A stretch of DNA of 64,000 nt from Octopus sinensis (Eukaryota): assembly GCF_006345805.1 (NCBI RefSeq), contig NC_042997.1, positions 88,908,001-88,972,000 on the forward strand, given 5' to 3'. Positions 11,290 through 49,762 of the stretch are shown in pieces. Below the pieces are notes generated by a model that was given only the letters and a program-made list of their open reading frames with translations, made no database searches and was not told the DNA's origin. The position numbers were made by a program, and so were the translations under genes. How positions within the stretch are numbered: the first letter of the stretch is position 1; every line of letters begins with the position of its first letter.

Positions 11290-12085
11290 TAGGGAGTTCA
11301 TGTCTCAGATTAAAGAGAAGACAGACAGGGAAAAAAGATGGCTGCTGATGACTAAAAGTAATAACCAGAAACGGAGGCTCTAATCTGTGCTGCCCAAGAG
11401 CAGGCGCTAAGAACAAACTACATAAAATATAGAATAGACAACACAACAGAAAGTGATAAGTGCAGAATCTGTGGACAAAACGGTGAAACTGTACGGCATA
11501 TTACCAGCCAATGTACGCCACTAGTTCAGAAGGAATATTAGAGGCACCACGATAATATAGCCAGGCTTGTTCATTGGACACTTTGCAACAAGTATGGATT
11601 TCACAGAGCAAAAAATTGGTACGACCACAAACCTGAAGGCATCGTTGAAAATAGAAATGCAAAGATCCTATGGAATTTTATGATTCAGTGCGACCATGAG
11701 ATAGAGAATAGGAAGCCGGACATAGTCTTAATTGAGAAAGAAAACAAACTATGCTGGATCATAGATATAGCATACCCAGCTGACAACTAAGTATGCGATA
11801 AGGAAGAAAGAAAAGTCGAGTGATATGACAGGTTAGCTTGGGAAGTTAAGCAGCTGTGGTCGATAAAAAAAGGTATCAGTAGTACCAATAATTGTCGGAG
11901 CCCTGGGAACAATGAGCAAAAATTTCGAGAAGTACGTGGAACAAATAGGGGCTGCAATAAGGGTGAAGCACTTGCAATAAACAGCACTGCTTGGAACCGC
12001 TCGAATACTCCGGAAGGTGCTCGAAAAATAAGAGGTGTTACCTTAGTTCACTGGTAGTGAACAGCGTTAGAAGCTATGTAAAGGC
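11290..12085 (+). mobile_element. 3' fragment of an R4/Dong-type RLE non-LTR retrotransposon
   Basis: ETEALICAAQEQALRTN...CRICG...ETVRHITSQC (CCHC), HHD, NRKPDIV...IIDIA (REL endonuclease), VPIIVGALG, TALLGTARILRKVLE*. A short 3' UTR is followed by (AAT)3(GAT)n. Confidence 0.9.
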
Positions 12086-12250
12086 AATAATAATGATGAT
12101 GATGATGATGATAACATTTTAACTGTTCTCAGTGCATTTTCAACTTCGATTTTCTTATATTTCAGATGATTTGGTTTGTAGACGTGCTGCTCTTATTTAT
12201 GCATGCACGTTTAAATGACTGTGGCTCTGTACGAGTGTGTTTATGTATGT

Positions 12251-14897: not shown

Positions 14898-14907
14898 AGT
14901 ATGTATG

Positions 14908-15097
14908 TCATTGTTCAGTTTTATTTCAAGATTTCTTGCCAACAGAGAAAAAGCCGGTTTGTAACCTAGATCCAAGGCTCCTTCATTGGAATTTCAACAT
15001 CAACAGGGTATTTCTGTTTGTATGTATATATGTATATGTGAGATTTGTATGTTTTTATTATGTATGTATCCCCATGTATATAGTTGCCTATCTAGAC
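14908..15097 (-). mobile_element. 3' UTR-only copy of the (TACA)n-associated RLE LINE
   Basis: Shares CTAACCTAGATCCAAGG.TCCTTCATTGGAATTTCAACATCAAC and the AATGA|CATACA end with 47215-47445. Confidence 0.85.
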
Positions 15098-16094
15098 ATG
15101 TATGCATGTATGTATGCATGCATGCATGAAGTAATAGATATACTACACGAAATGAAATGAACGGAAACATTAGGTAAATTTCGAGCGTATTATTTTAATG
15201 AAACACATTTTTCTTGTCCCTGAGCAGAAAAAGCGACTGGGCTGGCTTGTATTAATATTTGTTATTTGTTCTTCTGAGATCGGATACTTATTTTCTGGCC
15301 ACGAAGAAAACAGTTATCTTACAACTGTTTATAGTAAACCCAAATTTGGGAAGAACTTGATTAATCTGATTAATTAGCATAACAGTTTAAATGTTTTGCA
15401 GCGAGATTTGGTTAATTAATTAATAAAGCATTATACTGCTTCGGGATAATTAGAAATTCAAGGTAAACTTAAGTATATCAGCTTATTTCTCTTTCTGTTG
15501 TGTATACTTACACATAGACACAGACACAGACATGCTCGCATATATGTATACACACACACACACCACACACATATATATATATACTCATATATATATATAC
15601 ATGTACACATACACACTCATATGAATGCATGTATGTATGTATGTATGTATGTATGTATGTATGTATGTATGTATGTATGTATGTATGTATGTATGCGTGT
15701 ATATATAAATGTAAGCAATCATTCTTTTTGGGGAATAGAAAATGAGTAACTGGTGAAATGCTAATAAACACCGAAGTTAGTCAGATCGATATTTCTGCTC
15801 TACAAGGAAGCAACTGTGACCTAATGACAGCATCTATTTCTCATAATGTGGTTAAAAACCGTGTGTTTATTGAAAACACGCGGTCGTTAACTTAAAGTAC
15901 TTGGGTAGTTTCTACATACGTTGTCTCATTGGCTACGCTGTGCTGTGAGAGGATTTCAGAAGACCAATCACCATTTATGTGATTTGAGACATAACACGCA
16001 TTATGGCTGCAATAAGAAGTCTTTAGAAAGATCGGAAGAACCGCTCTTAATCTTCCGGCTTTTCTGAAGAATGGTAGGTGTAGATGGCTATCTG

Positions 16095-27500: not shown

Positions 27501-28116
27501 TCTTTAACACGTATAATATAATACATGTTTCTAATTTTGACACAAAGTCAGCAGCTGTGGAGAAGGAGTGTGTCGATCCCCGCGGAATTCCATCTCAGAA
27601 CGTAATGACTGATGAAACGCCGCTAAGCTGTCAGCTCGCCGTCTTTTCAACACGTATAATATAAAAGCTTAATGCTAGATTGTGTACAGTTTTTTAACTT
27701 GTAAGCGTTGCATCTCAATGCAGAAGGTACTTTAAGCAATTGACATATTAAGCAAAATATTTTTTCTTGCTTTGCTCTAAAATGATTTGGAGTTAAAATA
27801 CCTGGTTAGAGTATATGGGCCCAAAAGTGAAATATGGGTTCTATCTAAATAGGTTCTCATTCAGCGCTTGTCCATTTAGAACAGTAGCACAACGTGTGTT
27901 TTGAGCGCCCTGGATGGTACTCGATTTAGCAGCTCTTTCCTTGCAAGTAACATAACTTCAACGACAACAAATATACGTATGTAAAGTGACTGCTCTGTGC
28001 GGTCTGCATATTCCACTCACCTCTCGCTACCGCACTTACTCAGAATTTACCATGCTATTTAGATTTACATGTACACACACACATACACACACATATACAT
28101 ATATATGTCTATGTGC

Positions 28117-28147
<31 letters not shown>

Positions 28148-28234
28148 TGTATGTATGTATGTATGTATGTATGTATGTATGTATGCATGCATGTATGTAT
28201 GTATGTATGTATGCATGTATGTATGTATGTATGT

Positions 28235-28483
28235 ATTCTCTGCTATTTTTTAAAATTATTATAAATCTTCTACAAGGATCCTTCTTTGGGATGTAGTTAA
28301 CCCAGACAAATTCACATTTGGAACTTGAGAAAAGTCTTGCGTATTTTTACTGTTCCACTCACAGATTGCACTTGTAATGTACGAATTAGCCGTCGATTTC
28401 TCTTTCTGAAAATCCCAGTTTATCCAGATTCTCCTTTAAGCATTTACTAACAAAACATAGTGCTCCAATTATTATTGCTATGA

Positions 28484-28485
<2 letters not shown>
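28235..28485 (-). mobile_element. 3' fragment of the (TACA)n-associated RLE LINE
   Basis: FIAIIIGALCFVSKCLKENLDKLGFSEREID..LIRTLQVQSVSGTVKIRKTFLKFQM*, homologous to the C-terminus at 47445-47684. (TATG)n on both sides. Confidence 0.85.
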
Positions 28486-28514
<29 letters not shown>

Positions 28515-28650
28515 TGTATGTATGTATGTTTGTATGTATGTATGTATGTATGTATGTATGTATGCATGTATGTATATATGCATGTATGTATGTATGTATG
28601 TATGTATGTATGTATGTATGTATGTATGTATGTATGTATGTATGTATGTA
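28486..28650. repeat. (TATG)n microsatellite between two head-to-head LINE fragments
   Basis: Directly visible. Confidence 0.95.
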
Positions 28651-35530: not shown

Positions 35531-36429
35531 CATCATCATCAACAGCAGTATGATCACCACCACTACTTCCACTATCATCATCATCGTTATCATTATCATC
35601 AGAAGTAGGCGATGGTAGGGGTGGGGTGGGGGAAGTGGAGCTGATAGCGGCCACGCTCACCTGCATATTTCATCTCACACATCGCTTCATACATATTTAA
35701 ATATTGAAATACATAATTCGATACTGACATAATACACCTGAAAGGGGGAGAAAGGAACAGAGAGGCGGGGATGGGATAAAGGGAGAAAAACATTTGTTCA
35801 TATACATACACCTGTGTGCTTACACACACACACACACACACACTTGTACATACGTATACATACAGACAGGCGAAACAGGCAGACAGACAAAAAAGACAGA
35901 CAGACATGCCTATTGATAAAGGATGTAAAAAAAATAAAGCCGATTCAGATTCCGTGCATCAAATGATGTTTGAATTAGATGCAATCAGGTGTAATTTTTC
36001 AGTCTACATTCCCTTGGTGATACGAGATCCACTTGATGCCGATAAAGGCCCTTCATCTACACGGGATACATGCCGACGCAAGCCAACACTAGTTTCCTCG
36101 AATTCCATATTTTACCCTACATACCAATGTACAACATACCTAAGTCAGCAAAGCTCAGCATTATTGGCGATTATTGTGCCTCTTTCAACGCATTTTACAG
36201 ATTGTTTTCTTTTCTTTTTTCTCTTTTCGCTTCCTTTTCCTTTCTTTGTTTTTGGGGGTATCTATGTATCTAAGTTTTTAGTTAGAATCCAAGTATATGT
36301 CTGCGTGTTTAAGCGTAAGCGTGTGCTTTATAAATATACGCACACAAACTTATATGAATATGCATTACATACATACTTACATACATACATGCGTACGTAC
36401 GTATGTTTTGTTCTCTCATTTTTTTCAAT

Positions 36430-37135
36430 TTGAAGTCTTCCTATAAGGAAAGAGCTTGTTTCTAATAAAGATACAACGCTCAATAGTCTGGCATATTTTT
36501 ACTGTTCTGCTTACAGATTATGGAGGCGCGTGGCTTAGTGGTTAGAGTATCAGCATCATGATCGTAAGATTGTGGTTTCGATTCCTGGACCGGGCGACGC
36601 GTTGTGTTCTTGAGCAAAACACTTCATTTCACGTTGCTCCAGTCCACTCAGCTGGCAAAAATGAGTAACGCTGCGATGGACTGGCGTCCCGTCCAGCTGG
36701 GGAGCACATACGCCATTGAAACCGGGAAACCGGGCCCATGAGCCTGACTAGGCTTTAAAAAAAGAGCGCTTACAGATTATATGTGCGTGTTTGCTGGTTG
36801 ATTTCTTTTTATGAAAAGCCTAACCTTTCCAGACTGCCACTTAGGTTTTTGCTCACAAGACCAAATGCACCAATTATTATAACTAAAAATATGAATTTAA
36901 AATCTGGGTATAGAAATTGAAGGTTTCAAAGTAGTTGATCATAGTTATCCTCTTTCTCTTTGATTTTCGAAAAAATATTCGCATTAGCATTGTGATTTTA
37001 GGTAGCCTATATTTTCAAGAATGGTGTTGAATCAGTTTGTTACGTAATCAAGTGCCCAATAATTACAGGTATAAATCTAAATCTATATTTTGAGTAATCT
37101 GCTTGTTTCTCATTGCTTCGGCATAGATATTTTCC
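36430..37135 (-). mobile_element. Two tandem C-terminal fragments of the RLE LINE family, the second interrupted by a SINE
   Basis: KENIYAEAMRN...YRFRFIPVIIG (36990-37135), then DNYDQLL*NLQFLYPDFKFIFLVIIIGAFGLVSKNL...LERLGFS (36782-36990) continuing SVSRTVKICQT (36430-36521). Confidence 0.75.
36522..36768 (+). mobile_element. Intact tRNA-derived SINE family C with 13-bp target-site duplication
   Basis: A-box TGGCTTAGTGG, B-box GGTTTCGATTCC; TSD GCTTACAGATTAT at 36509-36521 and 36769-36781. Confidence 0.92.
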
Positions 37136-37208
37136 TTATTTTTTTTATCTGTGTGTGCATGTATGTGTTATGTATGTATGTATGTATGTATGTATGTATG
37201 TATGTATG

Positions 37209-37239
<31 letters not shown>

Positions 37240-40022: not shown

Positions 40023-40089
40023 CTTAGTAGTACTAGAGCTGTGATCTCCCAATGCTGAGAAATAGCAGCTCGACCTAAAGAGACACCCT

Positions 40090-40295
40090 CAATCTCCAAA
40101 CTGCGCACCCTGACGAATAAAGTTATTCCAGAGATCCTCGAAGAAACAGCCTTTCAACCCACAAGTATTGGTGCATTTCGCGATGTTTGTAAGTGTCTAA
40201 TAGTAAAGTCGAGAAGTTGGGGTTTTACGCGAGAGTGACTACTTAACAGGGAGTTTGCAAATACAATCTGTGAGCGGAACAGTAAAATATGCCAC
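40090..40295 (+). mobile_element. Highly degraded RLE LINE C-terminal fragment
   Basis: FQPTSIGAF..VCKCL....WGF and SLQIQSVSGTVK; nucleotide similarity to 28340-28480 in opposite orientation. Confidence 0.6.
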
Positions 40296-40298
40296 AGG

Positions 40299-40680
40299 CT
40301 CACGGGCATGGCTGTGTGGTTAAAAAAATCTGTTTTGCAACCACTTGTTTTCGGATTCACTCCCACTGAACGGCACCGTAGGCAAATGTTTTCTGCTAGC
40401 CCTGGGATGACTAATGCCTTATGAGTGGATTTGGTAGGCAGAAAATGTGAGAAGCCCGTTGTATATATATATATGCGTATATGTATGTATGTGTGTGTGC
40501 ACGTGCGTGTATGTGAGTGTGTATTTTTCTCCCCTACGTGACAACCAGTGTTGTTTTGTTTACATCCTATACATAGCATTTCAGAAAAAAAATTAAGTAC
40601 TGGGTCAATTAACCCTACAATGTGGCGAGCTATCATGGTCGCAGTTCAATGAGTGAAACAAGCAAAGTCTAAAAGAATAA
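40299..40680 (+). mobile_element. SINE family A, diverged
   Basis: GGCATGGCTGTGTGGTTAA head through ATGGTCGCAGTTCAATGAGTGAAACAAG tail. Confidence 0.7.
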
Positions 40681-46485: not shown

Positions 46486-47214
46486 TACACATATATTATG
46501 CATATGTGTATGTATATATATATATATATATACATATATACAAATTATACATTACATATATTCATATATACATATGCATGCATATGTGTGTAGGTGCGTG
46601 AGTGTGAATGTGTGTGCGTGCATATATGTACGTGTGTGCACATGTATATGTGCGCATATATGTGTGCATGTGTGTCTGTGCGCGCATGTATGTGTGTGTG
46701 TGTAATACGTGTGTGAGCACATAAATACGGCAATATATACGTATGTGCGGATGTATCTGTGTTAGCGTTTGAGAGATTTTCTCTACCTGATTGAAGTTTT
46801 AAAAATCATGCTGGCCGGGCACCTGCTTGGGGGAAAGATTGTAAATAAAAGAATCGCTTTTTTTCTTTCTTTTTTTTTTTATTGTTGTCATCCTTAGCGT
46901 AACTGTTCACCTTCTGAATCTTTAGAAAATATTGCAGATTGTTATTGTCCCCGATAATGTCATCATCTATAGCACAAGAATTATGGAGCCATGTCCTTTC
47001 TCGAAGAATCTAAGAATGGCCGTTTGAACCGAGTGGGTTGTACTTAGATCCTGACTCCTCTAATAATGAGTAGAAAACTGAAGCCATATTTTGGGCACTG
47101 AATTTGCTGGCTTCTCATCAATGATCAGTGAGATGTCTGCATTCTTCCGTTTTTATTTAATGTATGTATGTTTGTATGTATGTATGTATGTATATATGTA
47201 TGTATGCATGTATG

Positions 47215-48108
47215 TCATTATTCAGTTTATTTGACGATTTCTTGCCGATAGAGAAAGAACTGATTTCTAACCTAGATCCAAGGTTCCTTCATTGGAATTT
47301 CAACATCAACAACTGGGTATTTTTGTATGTATGTATGTATGTATGTATGTATGCATGCATGTATGTATGTACGTGCAGATTTGTATGTTTTATGTATGTA
47401 TTCTCATGCATATTAGTTACATATCTAGACTTGTTCATATATATTTAAATGATAAACTTCTGGAGAGTTTTATGGATTCTTACAGTGTCAGTCGCGGAGT
47501 GGATCTGTAGTCTTCGAATTAGCTTTCTCTTTTCTGGTTTTGAGAAGCCTAATTTTTCAATATTGGTATATAAGCAGTGTGTTACATATCCCAAGGCCTC
47601 AATAATTACAGGTATAAATCTGAACTTGTAATCTGGAAAGAGTAACTGCAGATTTCTCAATAAATCAGCATAGGTGCTTTTCACTGATCTTCAGATTTAT
47701 GATAATATCTGCTGGTCAGCTAATTCCCATAACTGTGCATAGTTTCTCTTCTCTATTTCAAATCATTATTTCAGGTCTGTTGTGTTTACATTTTATTGAG
47801 GTCTTCACTGGTACATTCCACCAGTATTCCTTTTCATTATGAGTGGCTATGGCTTCTACTATCTTGTGGGTTTTTATTTCTTTGTCCTCGGGATTATACT
47901 TCGGATGGATTTCATTATAGAGTGTTCCAGCTACAACGTCATGTCTCATTGGTAGATAATACCGTGATGACATTTTCGGACAACTGCTTATGATGTGGGT
48001 GATATCTTTAGTGTGGACTCCACAAAGTCTGCTTCGGTTGTCACATCTTACGGCTTTTCCCGCATCTCTATCCCTTTTGTGCATCAGATACTTGGTTGAT
48101 ATTTCCTG
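47215..48108 (-). mobile_element. 5'-truncated R4-like RLE LINE flanked on both sides by (TACA)n
   Basis: QEISTKYLM...RLCGVHTKDITHIISSC (CCHC, first C mutated), RHDVVA, NRPEIMI, FIPVIIEALGYV...KFII*. A 230-bp 3' UTR contains an internal (TACA)n. TGTA runs at 47161-47214 and 48107-48186. Confidence 0.92.
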
Positions 48109-49762
48109 TATGTATGTATGTATGTATGTATGTATGTATGTATGTATGTATGTATGTATGTATGTATGTATGTATGTATGTATGTACGGCTACGAGGATG
48201 AGCTGGCTAGGAATGAGTGATGTTCATAAACTGACTACGGAGTGATACTAGAGCTGTGAAATCCTGCATGCATTAATTTCAACGCTACTCTCCTTCGATA
48301 ATTTCAATACTTCGACCAACACACCAAATTTTAAAAAAAGGATAAACTCTAAATGACATACAATTAAACAAAAAACTCTGGTTATCTGAAGATAAGAGGA
48401 CAGTAGTATAAACGTGTTTCTGTCACAACAACCGTCATCAGCACAGCAAATAGTCTGCTTTGATTTCAGCAGGCGAAATTCTCAGACTAAAACAGAAAAA
48501 GTAGAAAATATTTATGGTCTAAAGTAACTTGCATAATCTAAATGAAAATGAGCTACGAGAAATAAATGAGAGTGACCAATGGCATGAATATAGATAATAA
48601 AAACAAATACAAGTATACAATATGAACACAAGACACAAGATCAATACAAGACGCAAGATAAATACTTCCTTTATTGAAATTCACCTTTTGAGAATTAGGA
48701 AGATCGATATATCCTAGTTACTGACAAAGTACATACAAACATACATACATACATACATACATACATACATACATACATACATACATACATACATACATAC
48801 GTATTGAGTATTAGAAAGGTCGATATAATCGACTATATACTAACAGTCAAAAATATGAGTCATGATGCATATAGGAAAAAGATCAATATTTACCGTGAAA
48901 GACACAGAAACACAAAGAAATTGATATCATATGAGAAACTTTACAAATTTTAGAAAAAAAACTGTTTACAAACAAACGGGGTAAAGATGTCTCACTATAC
49001 ATACTTTTGAGTGTGCTTGTGTGAATGAGCGTGTGCGCGTGTGTATTAATGTTAGATTTTATTTCAACTTTATACAAAAATAATTTGACATTAAACTGAA
49101 GGATAACCCAATGCTTTTTTCTTTATATATTAGAGTATATGTTTATTAACTTTTATGGGGGAAGCATTGGAAATGACTACGAAGTTTCGGCTTGTTTGCA
49201 GCATATACTGTGATTTGAGCTCACGTCCATGGTCGTATACATTATATAATGATGTTGCAGTTATTCACTACCAGGCGAACTTTGATCGAACAGAAATGCT
49301 AGAAAAATATTAAATAGAACCCGCTTGTTTGTTATTCTGTATTTTTTCAGACAATATAGTTCTTGTTTCCTCTTCTTCGGTCCAAGAAGATATTGGTGTT
49401 GACTGAGTGCCTTTATACACTCAGCATTAGCTAAAAAAAATTATATGCATAAGCGTAGATGTTTCTTCTAAAACAACACCACAATTTCTCTACGAATCTT
49501 TACAAAAATATGCATACATATACAAAATCATCCCAGAATAGGGCATGAAAAAACTTTAAGATTTCTCTGGAGCAAAATTTGTACATTTTTGTAATACACA
49601 AGTTCAAGTGAATACACACAGTAAAATATATCAATGAGTTCGACAGACTATCACGAAGACAACAACGACAATATATATATATATATAAACAGTATATAAA
49701 CGCTTCATTACAAACAAGATTGCTTTCGAACACTAAAAGCTAAAGTCTAAAAACCTGTAACA

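What the first reader, a model, noticed from the sequence alone, without database searches (positions are those of the whole stretch)
47161..48186. Candidate (TACA)n-targeting RLE retrotransposon family
Seen: an 890-bp 5'-truncated CCHC+REL element sits between (TACA)n tracts on both sides. The 5' junction CATACAG-GAAATA reads in frame as IQEI, suggesting microhomology with the repeat, and the 3' UTR carries its own internal (TACA)n. Related fragments occur at 14908, 28235, 36430-37135 (two) and 40090; at 15097, 28485, ~37140 and 48108 the 5' edge abuts or nearly abuts the same repeat in the same orientation. Established: RLE LINEs are often sequence-specific, and microsatellite targeters are known for TAA (Dong), AC (Waldo/Mino) and TC/TTC (Kibi/Koshi); I know of none for TACA. 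Inference: a TACA-specific lineage that both uses and spreads this tetranucleotide. Caveat: TACA tracts are very common here, so chance adjacency must be excluded.
Basis: partly seen in the sequence, partly recalled or inferred. Interest (0 to 1): 0.8.

Follow-up and report, generated by a model that had tools for sequence, protein, structure and literature searches.

The report
LINE retrotransposon that inserts into TACA repeats
The region is a dead, front-truncated copy of a jumping gene (a LINE with a restriction-like endonuclease) that sits inside a TACA microsatellite; relatives in several genomes sit in the same way, so the family very probably targets this repeat, a new example of a known habit.

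Summary
Window 47161-48186 (minus strand) reads: (TACA)20, then the last ~220 codons of a LINE ORF (CCHC knuckle and restriction-like endonuclease; two stops and one frameshift), then a 229-nt 3'UTR, then a (TACA)n tail.

Four of six related fragments in the window have their 5' end at or within about 20 nt of a sense-oriented TACA tract. Two of these four are only near or degenerate. Taking three within 25 nt, chance gives about 4e-6.

Seven copies from other genomes, including Octopus vulgaris and Argonauta hians, and four of them full-length, start directly after (CATA)n. In those loci the repeat occurs only at the element's ends.

Close sister families instead carry (CTTA)n or (CA)n. In the one fully resolved case the same repeat lies on both sides.

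Best reading: an R2-group LINE that integrates by target-primed reverse transcription into the microsatellite matching its own RNA tail.

This is a known habit of such LINEs: Dong uses (TAA)n, Togen (TG)n, and some HERO families are microsatellite-specific. The APE-type Waldo already targets ACAY repeats. So this is a new member, not a new kind.

Not settled: clade placement (R4/Dong or HERO), and whether protein or RNA tail chooses the target. The claim that the family "spreads" TACA has only weak support.

The parts
48107..48186 (-). Upstream (5') flank: perfect (TACA)20 in the sense orientation of the element. This is the part of the target microsatellite left upstream of the insertion.
   Evidence: The sequence beyond it (48187 onwards) is unique and is not an element 3'UTR.
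47448..48106 (-). 5'-truncated ORF remnant of about 220 codons, covering the region from after the RT to the C-terminus. It is a pseudogene: stops at 47758-47760 and 47716-47718, a frameshift near 47680, RPD changed to RPE, and the first Cys of the CxxC changed to Ser.
   Evidence: It is 47-57% identical over 99% of its length to ORFs from other assemblies and 72% identical to an O. bimaculoides protein.
47980..48048 (-). CCHC zinc-knuckle region (RCDNRSRLC...HIISSC).
   Evidence: The columns C179, H188 and C193 are invariant or nearly so in alignment A1. There is a weak zf-RVT match.
47707..47781 (-). Core of the restriction-like (PD-(D/E)xK) endonuclease: HNRPEIMI ... VMGIS*PAD. Intact relatives read HN(R/K)PDI ... 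IIE(I/F)SCPAD ... K..EK.
47445..47447 (-). Stop codon (TAA) of the ORF.
47323..47444 (-). Extra 3'UTR segment specific to the A/E subfamily. It ends in an internal TACA-rich stretch (47385->47324).
   Evidence: Shared with copy E (75% identity over 244 columns). Absent from the O. vulgaris relative, where the canonical 3'UTR follows the stop codon directly.
47216..47322 (-). Canonical 3'UTR of the octopus family, about 105 nt. It contains GAAGGAACCTTGG and ends in AAACTGAATAATGA.
   Evidence: Aligns along its whole length with the 3'UTRs of B, C and E and of the O. vulgaris copy. The end motif AAACTGAACAAT is also found in L010.
47161..47215 (-). Imperfect (CATA/TACA)n, which is the 3' tail of the element, the downstream part of the target, or both.
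28236..28484 (-). Copy B: the last ~60 codons (one frameshift, stop codon at 28312-28314) plus an 83-nt 3'UTR. (TACA)n lies on both sides, at 28485-28650 and 28107-28235.
37049..37148 (-). Copy D: a short ORF fragment truncated at both ends. Its 5' end lies about 20 nt downstream of (TACA)17 at 37169-37238.
36405..36985 (-). Copy C, from a different subfamily. It is joined head-on to the 3' break of D and interrupted by a 247-bp antisense SINE (36521-36767) with a 12-bp target duplication, TAATCTGTAAGC. There is no TACA at its 5' end.
14899..15096 (-). Copy E: 3'UTR only, of the same subfamily as A. Its 5' end abuts the CATG/CATA tract at 15097-15128. Its tail is CATACATAC, followed by (TA)n.

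Best explanation
This is a decayed, 5'-truncated copy of a non-LTR retrotransposon. Intact members of the family encode one ~1100-aa protein with four parts: a small N-terminal three-helix domain, a reverse transcriptase, a CCHC knuckle and a restriction-like endonuclease.

The family integrates by target-primed reverse transcription into (TACA)n microsatellites. The proposed steps are inferred by analogy with R2 and Dong:
1. The endonuclease nicks the bottom strand inside the repeat.
2. The (ACAU)n tail of the element RNA pairs with the exposed (TGTA)n strand.
3. That strand primes cDNA synthesis.
4. Synthesis often stops early, which gives 5' truncation.
5. The cDNA end is joined back into the upstream part of the repeat, sometimes through a few bases of microhomology.

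The result is an element with the same repeat, in the same orientation, on both sides.

The element belongs to a widespread clade in which each family uses one repeat unit, (CATA)n, (CTTA)n or (CA)n. Close relatives have switched unit, so the match between RNA tail and target is probably part of how the site is chosen.
For: Shown:
- Anatomy of the window copy.
- Full-length relatives have RVT_1 and no APE domain. Their best solved-structure matches are R2 proteins, at 1e-24.
- In the window, 5' ends truncated at four different positions lie at or near sense TACA tracts. Chance gives about 4e-6.
- External 5' junctions directly after (CATA)n: L001, O. vulgaris L007, L009 full-length and L010, a second full-length element in L010, Argonauta L011 full-length and L015 full-length. 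In each locus the repeat is found only at the element's ends.
- The flanks upstream of these tracts are unique sequence, not element 3'UTRs. The copies are therefore not simple tandem arrays.
- Co-variation between sister families. P0004 (CATA on both sides) and P0002 (TTAC on both sides) are 85% identical, and their 3'UTRs align up to the tail. P0185 (CATA on both sides) and P0179 are 64% identical and share the 3' end TTATTACGA, which is followed by (CATA)n in one and (CA)n in the other.
- Repeat types are interleaved in a rough NJ tree.

Inferred: the order of the TPRT steps, the tail pairing and the microhomology.
Against: - No empty site, polymorphic insertion or biochemical assay is available, and target-site duplications cannot be read inside a repeat.
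- Two window fragments (C, F) and one O. bimaculoides copy (L006, rearranged) lack TACA at the 5' end.
- D and E are only near, or next to, degenerate tracts.
- In several copies the upstream tract is long and the downstream one only 3-5 units (L001, L008, L015). Simple insertion at a random point of a tract does not predict this.
- Co-variation of tail and target does not show which determines which.
- The loci came from protein look-ups, not from an unbiased genome census.
Confidence: 0.85

Rival explanations
1. The protein chooses the target. A DNA-binding part of the protein (the N-terminal three-helix domain, the CCHC region or the endonuclease) recognises (TACA)n. The RNA tail is only a by-product, copied from the downstream target by read-through transcription, as downstream 28S sequence is in R2 transcripts. 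On this reading, tail and target co-vary because the tail follows the target.
For: - R2 and R4/Dong are thought to find their sites through N-terminal Myb-like domains (PMC7998251).
- Full-length relatives share a conserved N-terminal domain predicted as a three-helix bundle, mean pLDDT 84.
- Co-variation alone fits this reading equally well.
Against: - The N-terminal domain is no more diverged than the rest of the protein between CATA and CA families: 63% against 64% overall, and 61% against 49% overall.
- The C-terminal 262 aa, which hold the CCHC and endonuclease, are 85% identical between the CATA and CTTA sisters.
- No significant Myb/SANT match was found by Pfam, PDB sequence search or fold search.
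Confidence: 0.35
2. The LINE has no target preference and simply carries a (TACA)n tail, as many LINEs carry short tandem-repeat tails. The TACA upstream of 5' ends is then either chance in a repeat-rich genome or the tail of an older, almost completely truncated copy.
For: - TACA tracts are common in the window: 28-38 oriented tracts.
- Tail-only or near tail-only insertions could not be recognised.
- Element-after-element arrangements do occur: D/C in the window, and two elements separated by 925 bp of (TACA)n in L010.
Against: - Chance is excluded numerically: about 4e-6 in the window.
- In seven external loci the only tracts of the unit are those at the element's ends.
- The sequence upstream of the 5' tracts never shows the element's 3'-terminal motif.
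- Inserting into older tails would itself be a preference for (TACA)n.
Confidence: 0.07
3. The upstream repeat is made during integration and was not there before. At the end of cDNA synthesis the reverse transcriptase jumps to the tail of another template RNA and copies it reiteratively.
For: - R2-type reverse transcriptases are known for template jumping (established knowledge, not tested here).
- The upstream tracts are often much longer than the downstream ones.
- The head-on D/C junction might be a template switch.
Against: - A jump to another element RNA should continue into that RNA's 3'UTR. None is seen upstream of any 5' tract.
- The tracts reach 165-200 bp of perfect repeat.
- Plenty of TACA tracts exist without any element, so targets were available.
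Confidence: 0.05

Closest known systems
Dong (R4/Dong clade RLE LINE, first described in Bombyx mori; also reported in molluscs, cnidarians and crustaceans)
   Same: - Single ORF with RT followed by a restriction-like endonuclease, and no N-terminal zinc finger.
- Inserts into a microsatellite, so that the repeat lies on both sides.
- Octopus repeat libraries label abundant LINEs 'Dong-R4': five families with 1129 recent insertions in O. vulgaris, mean length about 4.2 kb (my division of the reported coverage by insertions, PMC13282606). Whether this family is among them was not checked. The full-length relatives here are about the same length.
   Different: [quoted passage not shown] Here it is (TACA)n, with (CTTA)n and (CA)n in sister families.
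- Membership of the R4/Dong clade was not tested by RT phylogeny.
- No HDV-like ribozyme was detected at the 5' end, whereas Dong has one (PMC3774820).
HERO clade and Togen families (RLE LINEs)
   Same: - RLE LINEs, some of whose families are microsatellite-specific. This is stated for HERO in PMC4640811, citing a Repbase report on a leech family.
- Togen families in fish are (TG)n-specific. (TG)n is the same repeat as the (CA)n tails of P0179 and P0183 here.
   Different: - The repeat unit used by the HERO families is not given in the literature I could read.
- The relationship to this clade was not tested.
- Togen was described from fish. These elements come from cephalopods and from unidentified assemblies, some from marine samples.
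Waldo (R1 clade, APE-type LINE of insects)
   Same: It targets ACAY microsatellites (PMC3812793). The ACAT version is the same repeat as TACA.
   Different: Waldo has an N-terminal apurinic/apyrimidinic-type endonuclease and belongs to a different LINE group. The shared target is convergence, not relatedness.
R2 (28S rDNA-specific RLE LINE)
   Same: - Best solved-structure match of the full-length relative, 1e-24 over RT and beyond.
- Same order of RT, CCHC and RLE.
- Its TPRT mechanism is the model used here.
   Different: - R2 has N-terminal zinc finger(s) plus Myb and a single-sequence target in rDNA.
- These elements have neither a zinc finger nor an rDNA target.

Membership tests
RLE-type non-LTR retrotransposons (R2 group: R2, R4/Dong, NeSL, HERO, CRE) | Single ORF with a reverse transcriptase domain and no APE endonuclease | tested here: met
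   Full-length relatives P0033 and P0034 hit RVT_1 (3e-27, 7e-29) and no APE domain. PDB best hits are R2 proteins. The window copy itself lacks the RT because of 5' truncation.
RLE-type non-LTR retrotransposons (R2 group: R2, R4/Dong, NeSL, HERO, CRE) | CCHC motif followed by a PD-(D/E)xK restriction-like endonuclease, C-terminal to the RT | tested here: met
   The motifs CxxC...H....C, (R/K)PD, E-x-S-C-P-x-D and K..EK are conserved in alignment A1. They are present but mutated in the window copy. This rests on sequence motifs only. No Pfam model covers the endonuclease, and no structure was compared.
Microsatellite-specific LINEs (the behaviour of Dong, Togen, Waldo, Mino, Kibi and Koshi) | The same repeat in the same orientation on both sides of copies that are truncated at different points | tested here: met
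   Window copies A and B, and less cleanly D and E. External copies L001, L007, L009, L010 (two elements), L011 and L015 for CATA, and L008 for CTTA.
Microsatellite-specific LINEs (the behaviour of Dong, Togen, Waldo, Mino, Kibi and Koshi) | Empty sites showing an uninterrupted repeat, or endonuclease/TPRT specificity in vitro | not testable with these tools
   No whole octopus genome, population data or biochemistry was available. A look-up of the window ORF found no other assembly.
R4/Dong clade | RT domain groups with R4 and Dong in a phylogeny | not tested
   No R4, Dong, HERO or NeSL reference sequences were reachable. Repbase and Dfam are not among the tools.
R4/Dong clade | N-terminal diverged Myb/SANT-like domain without zinc fingers (PMC7998251) | tested here: inconclusive
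   No zinc finger is present. A conserved ~60-aa N-terminal domain (consensus RNRDYS..F.WT.ELN...Y.CY.....GY..R.K.LWD..HP) is predicted as a three-helix bundle, mean pLDDT 84. There is no significant match by Pfam, PDB sequence search or fold search (best hit E=4, a C-terminal domain of CHD1).
R4/Dong clade | HDV-like self-cleaving ribozyme at the 5' end (PMC3774820) | tested here: inconclusive
   No ribozyme family was hit at the 5' ends of L009, L011 and L015, nor at the start of the L002 contig, which is probably not a true 5' end, even at E<=10. The folds are not unusually stable. The Rfam scans may miss such ribozymes, so absence is not shown.
R4/Dong clade | Target is rDNA (R4) or (TAA)n (Dong) | tested here: not met
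   The flanks are (TACA)n, or (CTTA)n/(CA)n in sister families. The (ATA)n at the start of contig L002 is most likely an internal poly-Asn coding repeat, not a junction.
Waldo (R1 clade) | APE-type endonuclease N-terminal to the RT | tested here: not met
   The endonuclease is C-terminal and restriction-like, and no APE domain is present.

The most novel reading that the evidence does not exclude
In this clade the insertion site is set mainly by base pairing between the short tandem-repeat tail of the element RNA and the nicked target. A family would then retarget from (CATA)n to (CTTA)n or (CA)n simply by a change in its tail. That would make it a naturally RNA-programmable LINE integration system, whose protein has little sequence preference of its own.
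Probability: 0.3. Interest if true: 0.7.

Novelty: new member of a known kind. Interest (0 to 1): 0.42.

Why it matters
Microsatellite-specific LINEs are a known but small and poorly understood group. How they recognise a repeat has not been worked out: a 2013 review says so for the microsatellite targeters it lists (PMC3812793), and I found nothing later in the literature I could read.

This family offers three things:
- A tetranucleotide target for RLE-type LINEs.
- Intact full-length copies to work with. The ORFs of P0200, P0185 and P0179 are uninterrupted.
- Sister pairs, 85% identical over the C-terminal 262 aa and 64% over the full length, that use different repeats. These pairs are a ready-made experiment on whether the protein or the RNA tail sets the site.

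The same question is being asked of R2 elements in genome engineering.

For octopus genomics, one group of LINEs is tied to one class of simple repeat. That affects repeat annotation, assembly breaks and microsatellite markers.

Tried and rejected
1. Pfam on the window peptide gave only a sub-threshold zf-RVT hit. The identification therefore rests on homologues.

2. The metagenome scan returned only four loci, all of the (CTTA)n type. The (ATA)n at the start of L002 first looked like a Dong-type (TAA)n junction. I rejected that because the ORF there lacks the N-terminal domain and the repeat can encode poly-Asn.

3. Rfam searches for an HDV-like ribozyme at four starts (three full-length 5' ends and the L002 contig start) found nothing. 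(TGTA)n gives a spurious sub-threshold mir-297 hit.

4. Testing whether the N-terminal domain is Myb/SANT-like found nothing significant by Pfam, a PDB profile search, or AlphaFold2 followed by Foldseek.

5. Literature searches for a described (TACA)/(ACAT)/(CATA)n-specific RLE LINE found none in the held library. Kojima & Fujiwara 2004 and Biedler 2015 are not held. The supplement of the O. vulgaris repeat paper has no consensus library.

6. Species identification and an orthologous locus through the window ORF: not on record.

7. 'The element seeds most TACA tracts' is rejected for this window. Only tracts at three or four of the TACA loci adjoin a recognisable fragment.

8. Tandem-array origin of the 5' tracts is rejected, because the upstream flanks are unique.
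Full report
**What is in the sequence**

The window is AT-rich (64%) and packed with simple repeats. The best named protein matches come from Octopus bimaculoides and O. vulgaris, so it is probably an octopod genome. The species was not determined.

The finding lies on the minus strand. Read 5' to 3', it contains:

| Feature | Coordinates |
|---|---|
| Perfect (TACA)20 | 48186->48107 |
| Open-frame remnant of about 220 codons | 48106->47448 |
| TAA stop codon | 47447-47445 |
| 3'UTR | 47444->47216 |
| Imperfect (CATA/TACA)n | 47215->47161 |

The peptide carries three motifs:
- A CCHC knuckle, RCDNRSRLC...HIISSC, whose first Cys is now Ser.
- HNRPEIMI, where relatives have (R/K)PD.
- ...IS*PAD, where relatives have IIE(I/F)SCPAD.

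Together with a following K..EK, the last two make a restriction-like PD-(D/E)xK endonuclease.

The copy is dead. It has two in-frame stops (47760-47758 and 47718-47716) and one frameshift near 47680. Homologues read AIQEQEISTKYL where the window reads ...TYIHTYIQEISTKYL. The element is therefore cut off inside a conserved motif, and the repeat begins exactly there.

**What kind of element it is**

A search of 5.8 billion proteins found 24 relatives of the peptide, all 370 aa or shorter. A profile search of the representative library found 6292 relatives, many of 1000-1500 aa.

- Full-length relatives hit Pfam RVT_1 and nothing else of note. Their best solved-structure matches are R2 retrotransposon proteins, at 1e-24.
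- They have no N-terminal zinc finger and no APE endonuclease.
- They share a conserved N-terminal stretch, consensus RNRDYS..F.WT.ELN...Y.CY.....GY..R.K.LWD..HP.
- AlphaFold2 predicts that stretch as a three-helix bundle with mean pLDDT 84.
- Neither Pfam, a PDB profile search nor Foldseek gives it a significant name.

The element is therefore an RLE-type LINE of the R2 group.

A diverged Myb/SANT-like N-terminal domain without zinc fingers has been reported for the R4/Dong clade (PMC7998251). Octopus repeat annotations list 'Dong-R4' as the most numerous recently active LINE group. It has five families and 1129 insertions, about 4.2 kb each by my division of the reported coverage (PMC13282606). 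'Hero' families are also listed.

I could not place this family between R4/Dong and HERO, because no reference sequences were reachable.

**Is the adjacency to TACA real and more than chance?**

Besides copy A, the window holds five related fragments.

| Copy | Coordinates | 5' end | Notes |
|---|---|---|---|
| B | 28484->28236 | Directly after (TACA)n | 166 bp of repeat upstream, 129 bp downstream |
| D | 37148->37049 | About 20 nt downstream of (TACA)17 | Degenerate ACA-rich sequence in between |
| E | 15096->14908 | Abuts a degenerate CATG/CATA tract | 3'UTR only; ends in CATACATAC |
| C | 36985->36405 | Joined to the broken 3' end of D | No TACA at its 5' end |
| F | about 40060-40300 | No TACA | Plus strand, more diverged |

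A random oriented position lies within 25 nt downstream of a sense tract with p of about 0.006-0.008. Three or more of six by chance then has probability 4e-6 to 9e-6.

The four truncation points differ, so the upstream repeat cannot be part of the element.

**Copies elsewhere**

I fetched the DNA around relatives from other assemblies. Most are not from named species: apart from the named octopod genomes they are ENA assemblies, some metagenomic (one TARA ocean sample), whose source organisms I could not identify.

| Locus | Source | Copy | Upstream | Downstream |
|---|---|---|---|---|
| L001 | ERZ25067903 | 5'-truncated | About 50 units of (CATA) | (ACAT)3, then unique DNA |
| L007 | O. vulgaris | Truncated in the RT | (CATA)20 | (TA)n, then ACATACATA |
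| L009 | ERZ25068966 | Full-length, 1151-aa ORF | About 42 units of (CATA), directly before CGACACCGAAGAGGACGG | Off the contig |
| L015 | ERZ17100903 | Full-length, 1142-aa ORF | (CATA)n before the near-identical 5' end CAACATCGAAGAGGAAGG | ...TTATTACGA, then (CATA)5, then unique DNA |
| L011 | Argonauta hians | Full-length | (ACAT)n | 90-nt 3'UTR, then CATACACACA... |
| L010, first element | ERZ25878582 | 5'-truncated | (CATA)25 | ...AAACTGAACAATTA, then 925 bp of (TACA)n |
| L010, second element | ERZ25878582 | Full-length, different family | Starts right after that 925-bp tract | Not examined |

- In every one of these loci, the only tracts of the unit are those at the element's ends.
- None of the upstream flanks resembles an element 3'UTR.
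- One O. bimaculoides copy (L006) lacks TACA. It is cut off at the 3' end and sits in a zinc-finger gene array, so it is uninformative.

**Sister families use other repeats**

- **L008** encodes P0002, which is 85% identical to P0004 of L001. Their 3'UTRs align up to the last base before the tail. L008 has (TTAC)21 upstream and (ACTT)5 downstream.
- **P0179** is 64% identical to P0185 and shares its 3' end, TTATTACGA. Its tail is (CA)n.
- **P0183** has a CA-rich tract upstream, but the junction is not well defined.
- **L002-L004 and L012-L014** end in (CTTA)n or (ACTT)n.

In a rough neighbour-joining tree of the C-terminal 225 residues, the repeat types are interleaved. The repeat has therefore been switched several times. 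Where both junctions can be read (L008), the upstream flank changed together with the tail.

**How it most likely works**

These points are shown:
- The same repeat, in the same orientation, lies on both sides.
- This holds whatever the truncation point.
- It holds across divergent families and genomes.

The mechanism is inferred from what is established for R2 and assumed for Dong. The endonuclease nicks the bottom strand in the repeat. The (ACAU)n end of the RNA pairs with the freed (TGTA)n strand. Reverse transcription is primed from the nick. The upstream join is then made inside the remaining repeat.

At the window junction, the repeat's ACA could overlap the ACA of the element's GGACAAGAAATA, as read in an O. 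bimaculoides relative. A single junction cannot establish this microhomology.

**Protein or RNA tail?**

Which of the two picks the repeat is open.

- Co-variation fits both readings. If transcripts read through into the downstream target, the tail would simply follow the target.
- Two observations lean towards the RNA. The N-terminal domain is no more diverged than the rest of the protein between CATA and CA families (63% against 64% overall, and 61% against 49%). The CCHC-endonuclease region is 85% identical between the CATA and CTTA sisters.
- I put the RNA-guided reading at about 0.3 and treat the protein-guided reading as a live rival.

**An oddity in the 3'UTR**

The last ~105 nt of copy A align along their whole length with the complete 3'UTRs of B, C and the O. 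vulgaris copy. In the O. vulgaris copy that UTR follows the stop codon directly.

Copies A and E share an extra 120-nt segment between the stop codon and this canonical UTR. That segment ends in the internal TACA stretch.

The simplest reading is that their master copy is a composite. A UTR-only copy landed in the (TACA)n tail of a longer copy, and the whole was then propagated. If so, it is one more insertion into (TACA)n. This is inference.

**Comparison with what is known**

- RLE LINEs are mostly target-specific, and their targets include microsatellites (PMC4640811).
- Dong inserts in (TAA)n in insects, molluscs, cnidarians and an ostracod (PMC3812793, PMC7998251).
- Togen families are (TG)n-specific, and some HERO families are microsatellite-specific (PMC4640811).
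- Among APE-type LINEs, Waldo targets ACAY repeats, Mino AC, Kibi TC and Koshi TTC (PMC3812793).

ACAT is the same repeat as TACA, so this target already has a LINE, though of an unrelated type.

I found no description of a (TACA)n-specific RLE LINE in the held literature. Repbase and Dfam may hold the octopus consensus sequences with a note on the target, and I could not consult them.

**Does the family spread the repeat?**

Only weakly, in this window. The window has 28 merged oriented tracts of three or more units. Only the tracts at copies A and B, the one upstream of D, and E's short degenerate tract adjoin a recognisable fragment. Tail-only insertions would be invisible, so the question stays open.

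**Verdict**

- The element is a new member of a known kind, the microsatellite-specific RLE LINEs.
- The most useful by-product is the set of sister families with switched repeats. These make the question 'protein or RNA tail?' directly testable.

Noticed in passing
window 11368-12112 (+): A fragment of a second, distant RLE LINE family. It is 27% identical to the TACA family and 36-49% identical to P0221. About 55 nt after its end lies AATAATAAT(GAT)n, possibly that family's own repeat tail.
   Followed up: partly
window 36509-36779 (-): A 247-bp SINE-like element with a tRNA-like head lies antisense inside LINE copy C. It has an A-rich tail and a perfect 12-bp target duplication, TAATCTGTAAGC, so a different, poly-A-type LINE mobilised it. 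ARAGORN finds no tRNA there.
   Followed up: partly
window 36985-37049 (-): Copy C (one subfamily) begins exactly where copy D (another subfamily) breaks off, at nearly the same position of the ORF. This could be a nested insertion followed by a deletion, or a template switch during reverse transcription.
   Followed up: no
window ~40060-40440 (+): A diverged C-terminal LINE fragment (IGAFRDV...LQIQSVSGTVKY) on the plus strand, with no TACA at its 5' end. It is followed by a second SINE-like insert and then (TA)n/(TGTA)n in the wrong orientation for a tail.
   Followed up: partly
whole window: All five copies of the TACA family lie on the minus strand. TACA tracts are also skewed towards it: 18 minus-sense against 10 plus-sense tracts of three or more units.
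   Followed up: no
protein P0009 (NCBI, 'MAG: hypothetical protein AAFN09_17640, Pseudomonadota bacterium') compared with L011:5770-6513: This protein, filed under a bacterial metagenome-assembled genome, is 98% identical to the LINE in the Argonauta hians genome. The 1.1-kb contig is almost certainly cephalopod DNA that was binned as bacterial.
   Followed up: yes
L006 (O. bimaculoides CM046628.1, gene model LOC106878562): The 'uncharacterized protein' gene model is a 3'-truncated copy of this LINE lying next to C2H2 zinc-finger repeats (HKRIHTGEKPY...). It is a transposon fragment annotated as a gene.
   Followed up: partly
L009 3708-3780; L015 40-59: Long (TGTA)n tracts score against the Rfam mir-297 model (43.5 bits; the family threshold is 90). 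This is a repeat-driven match, not a microRNA.
   Followed up: yes
literature: PMC9115989: The octopus-brain LINE is described there as an RTE. Yet it is reported to have a C-terminal endonuclease, an N-terminal C2H2 zinc finger, an 1109-aa ORF and a microsatellite making up most of the 3'UTR. That layout resembles an RLE (R2-group) LINE more than an RTE, which has an N-terminal APE. The classification may deserve a second look.
   Followed up: no
L012-L014 3646-4450; L004 3' end: In the (ACTT)n-tailed family the tail grades into hundreds of bp of (ACTG)n and then (ACGG)n. This suggests the repeat mutated stepwise and then expanded after insertion.
   Followed up: no
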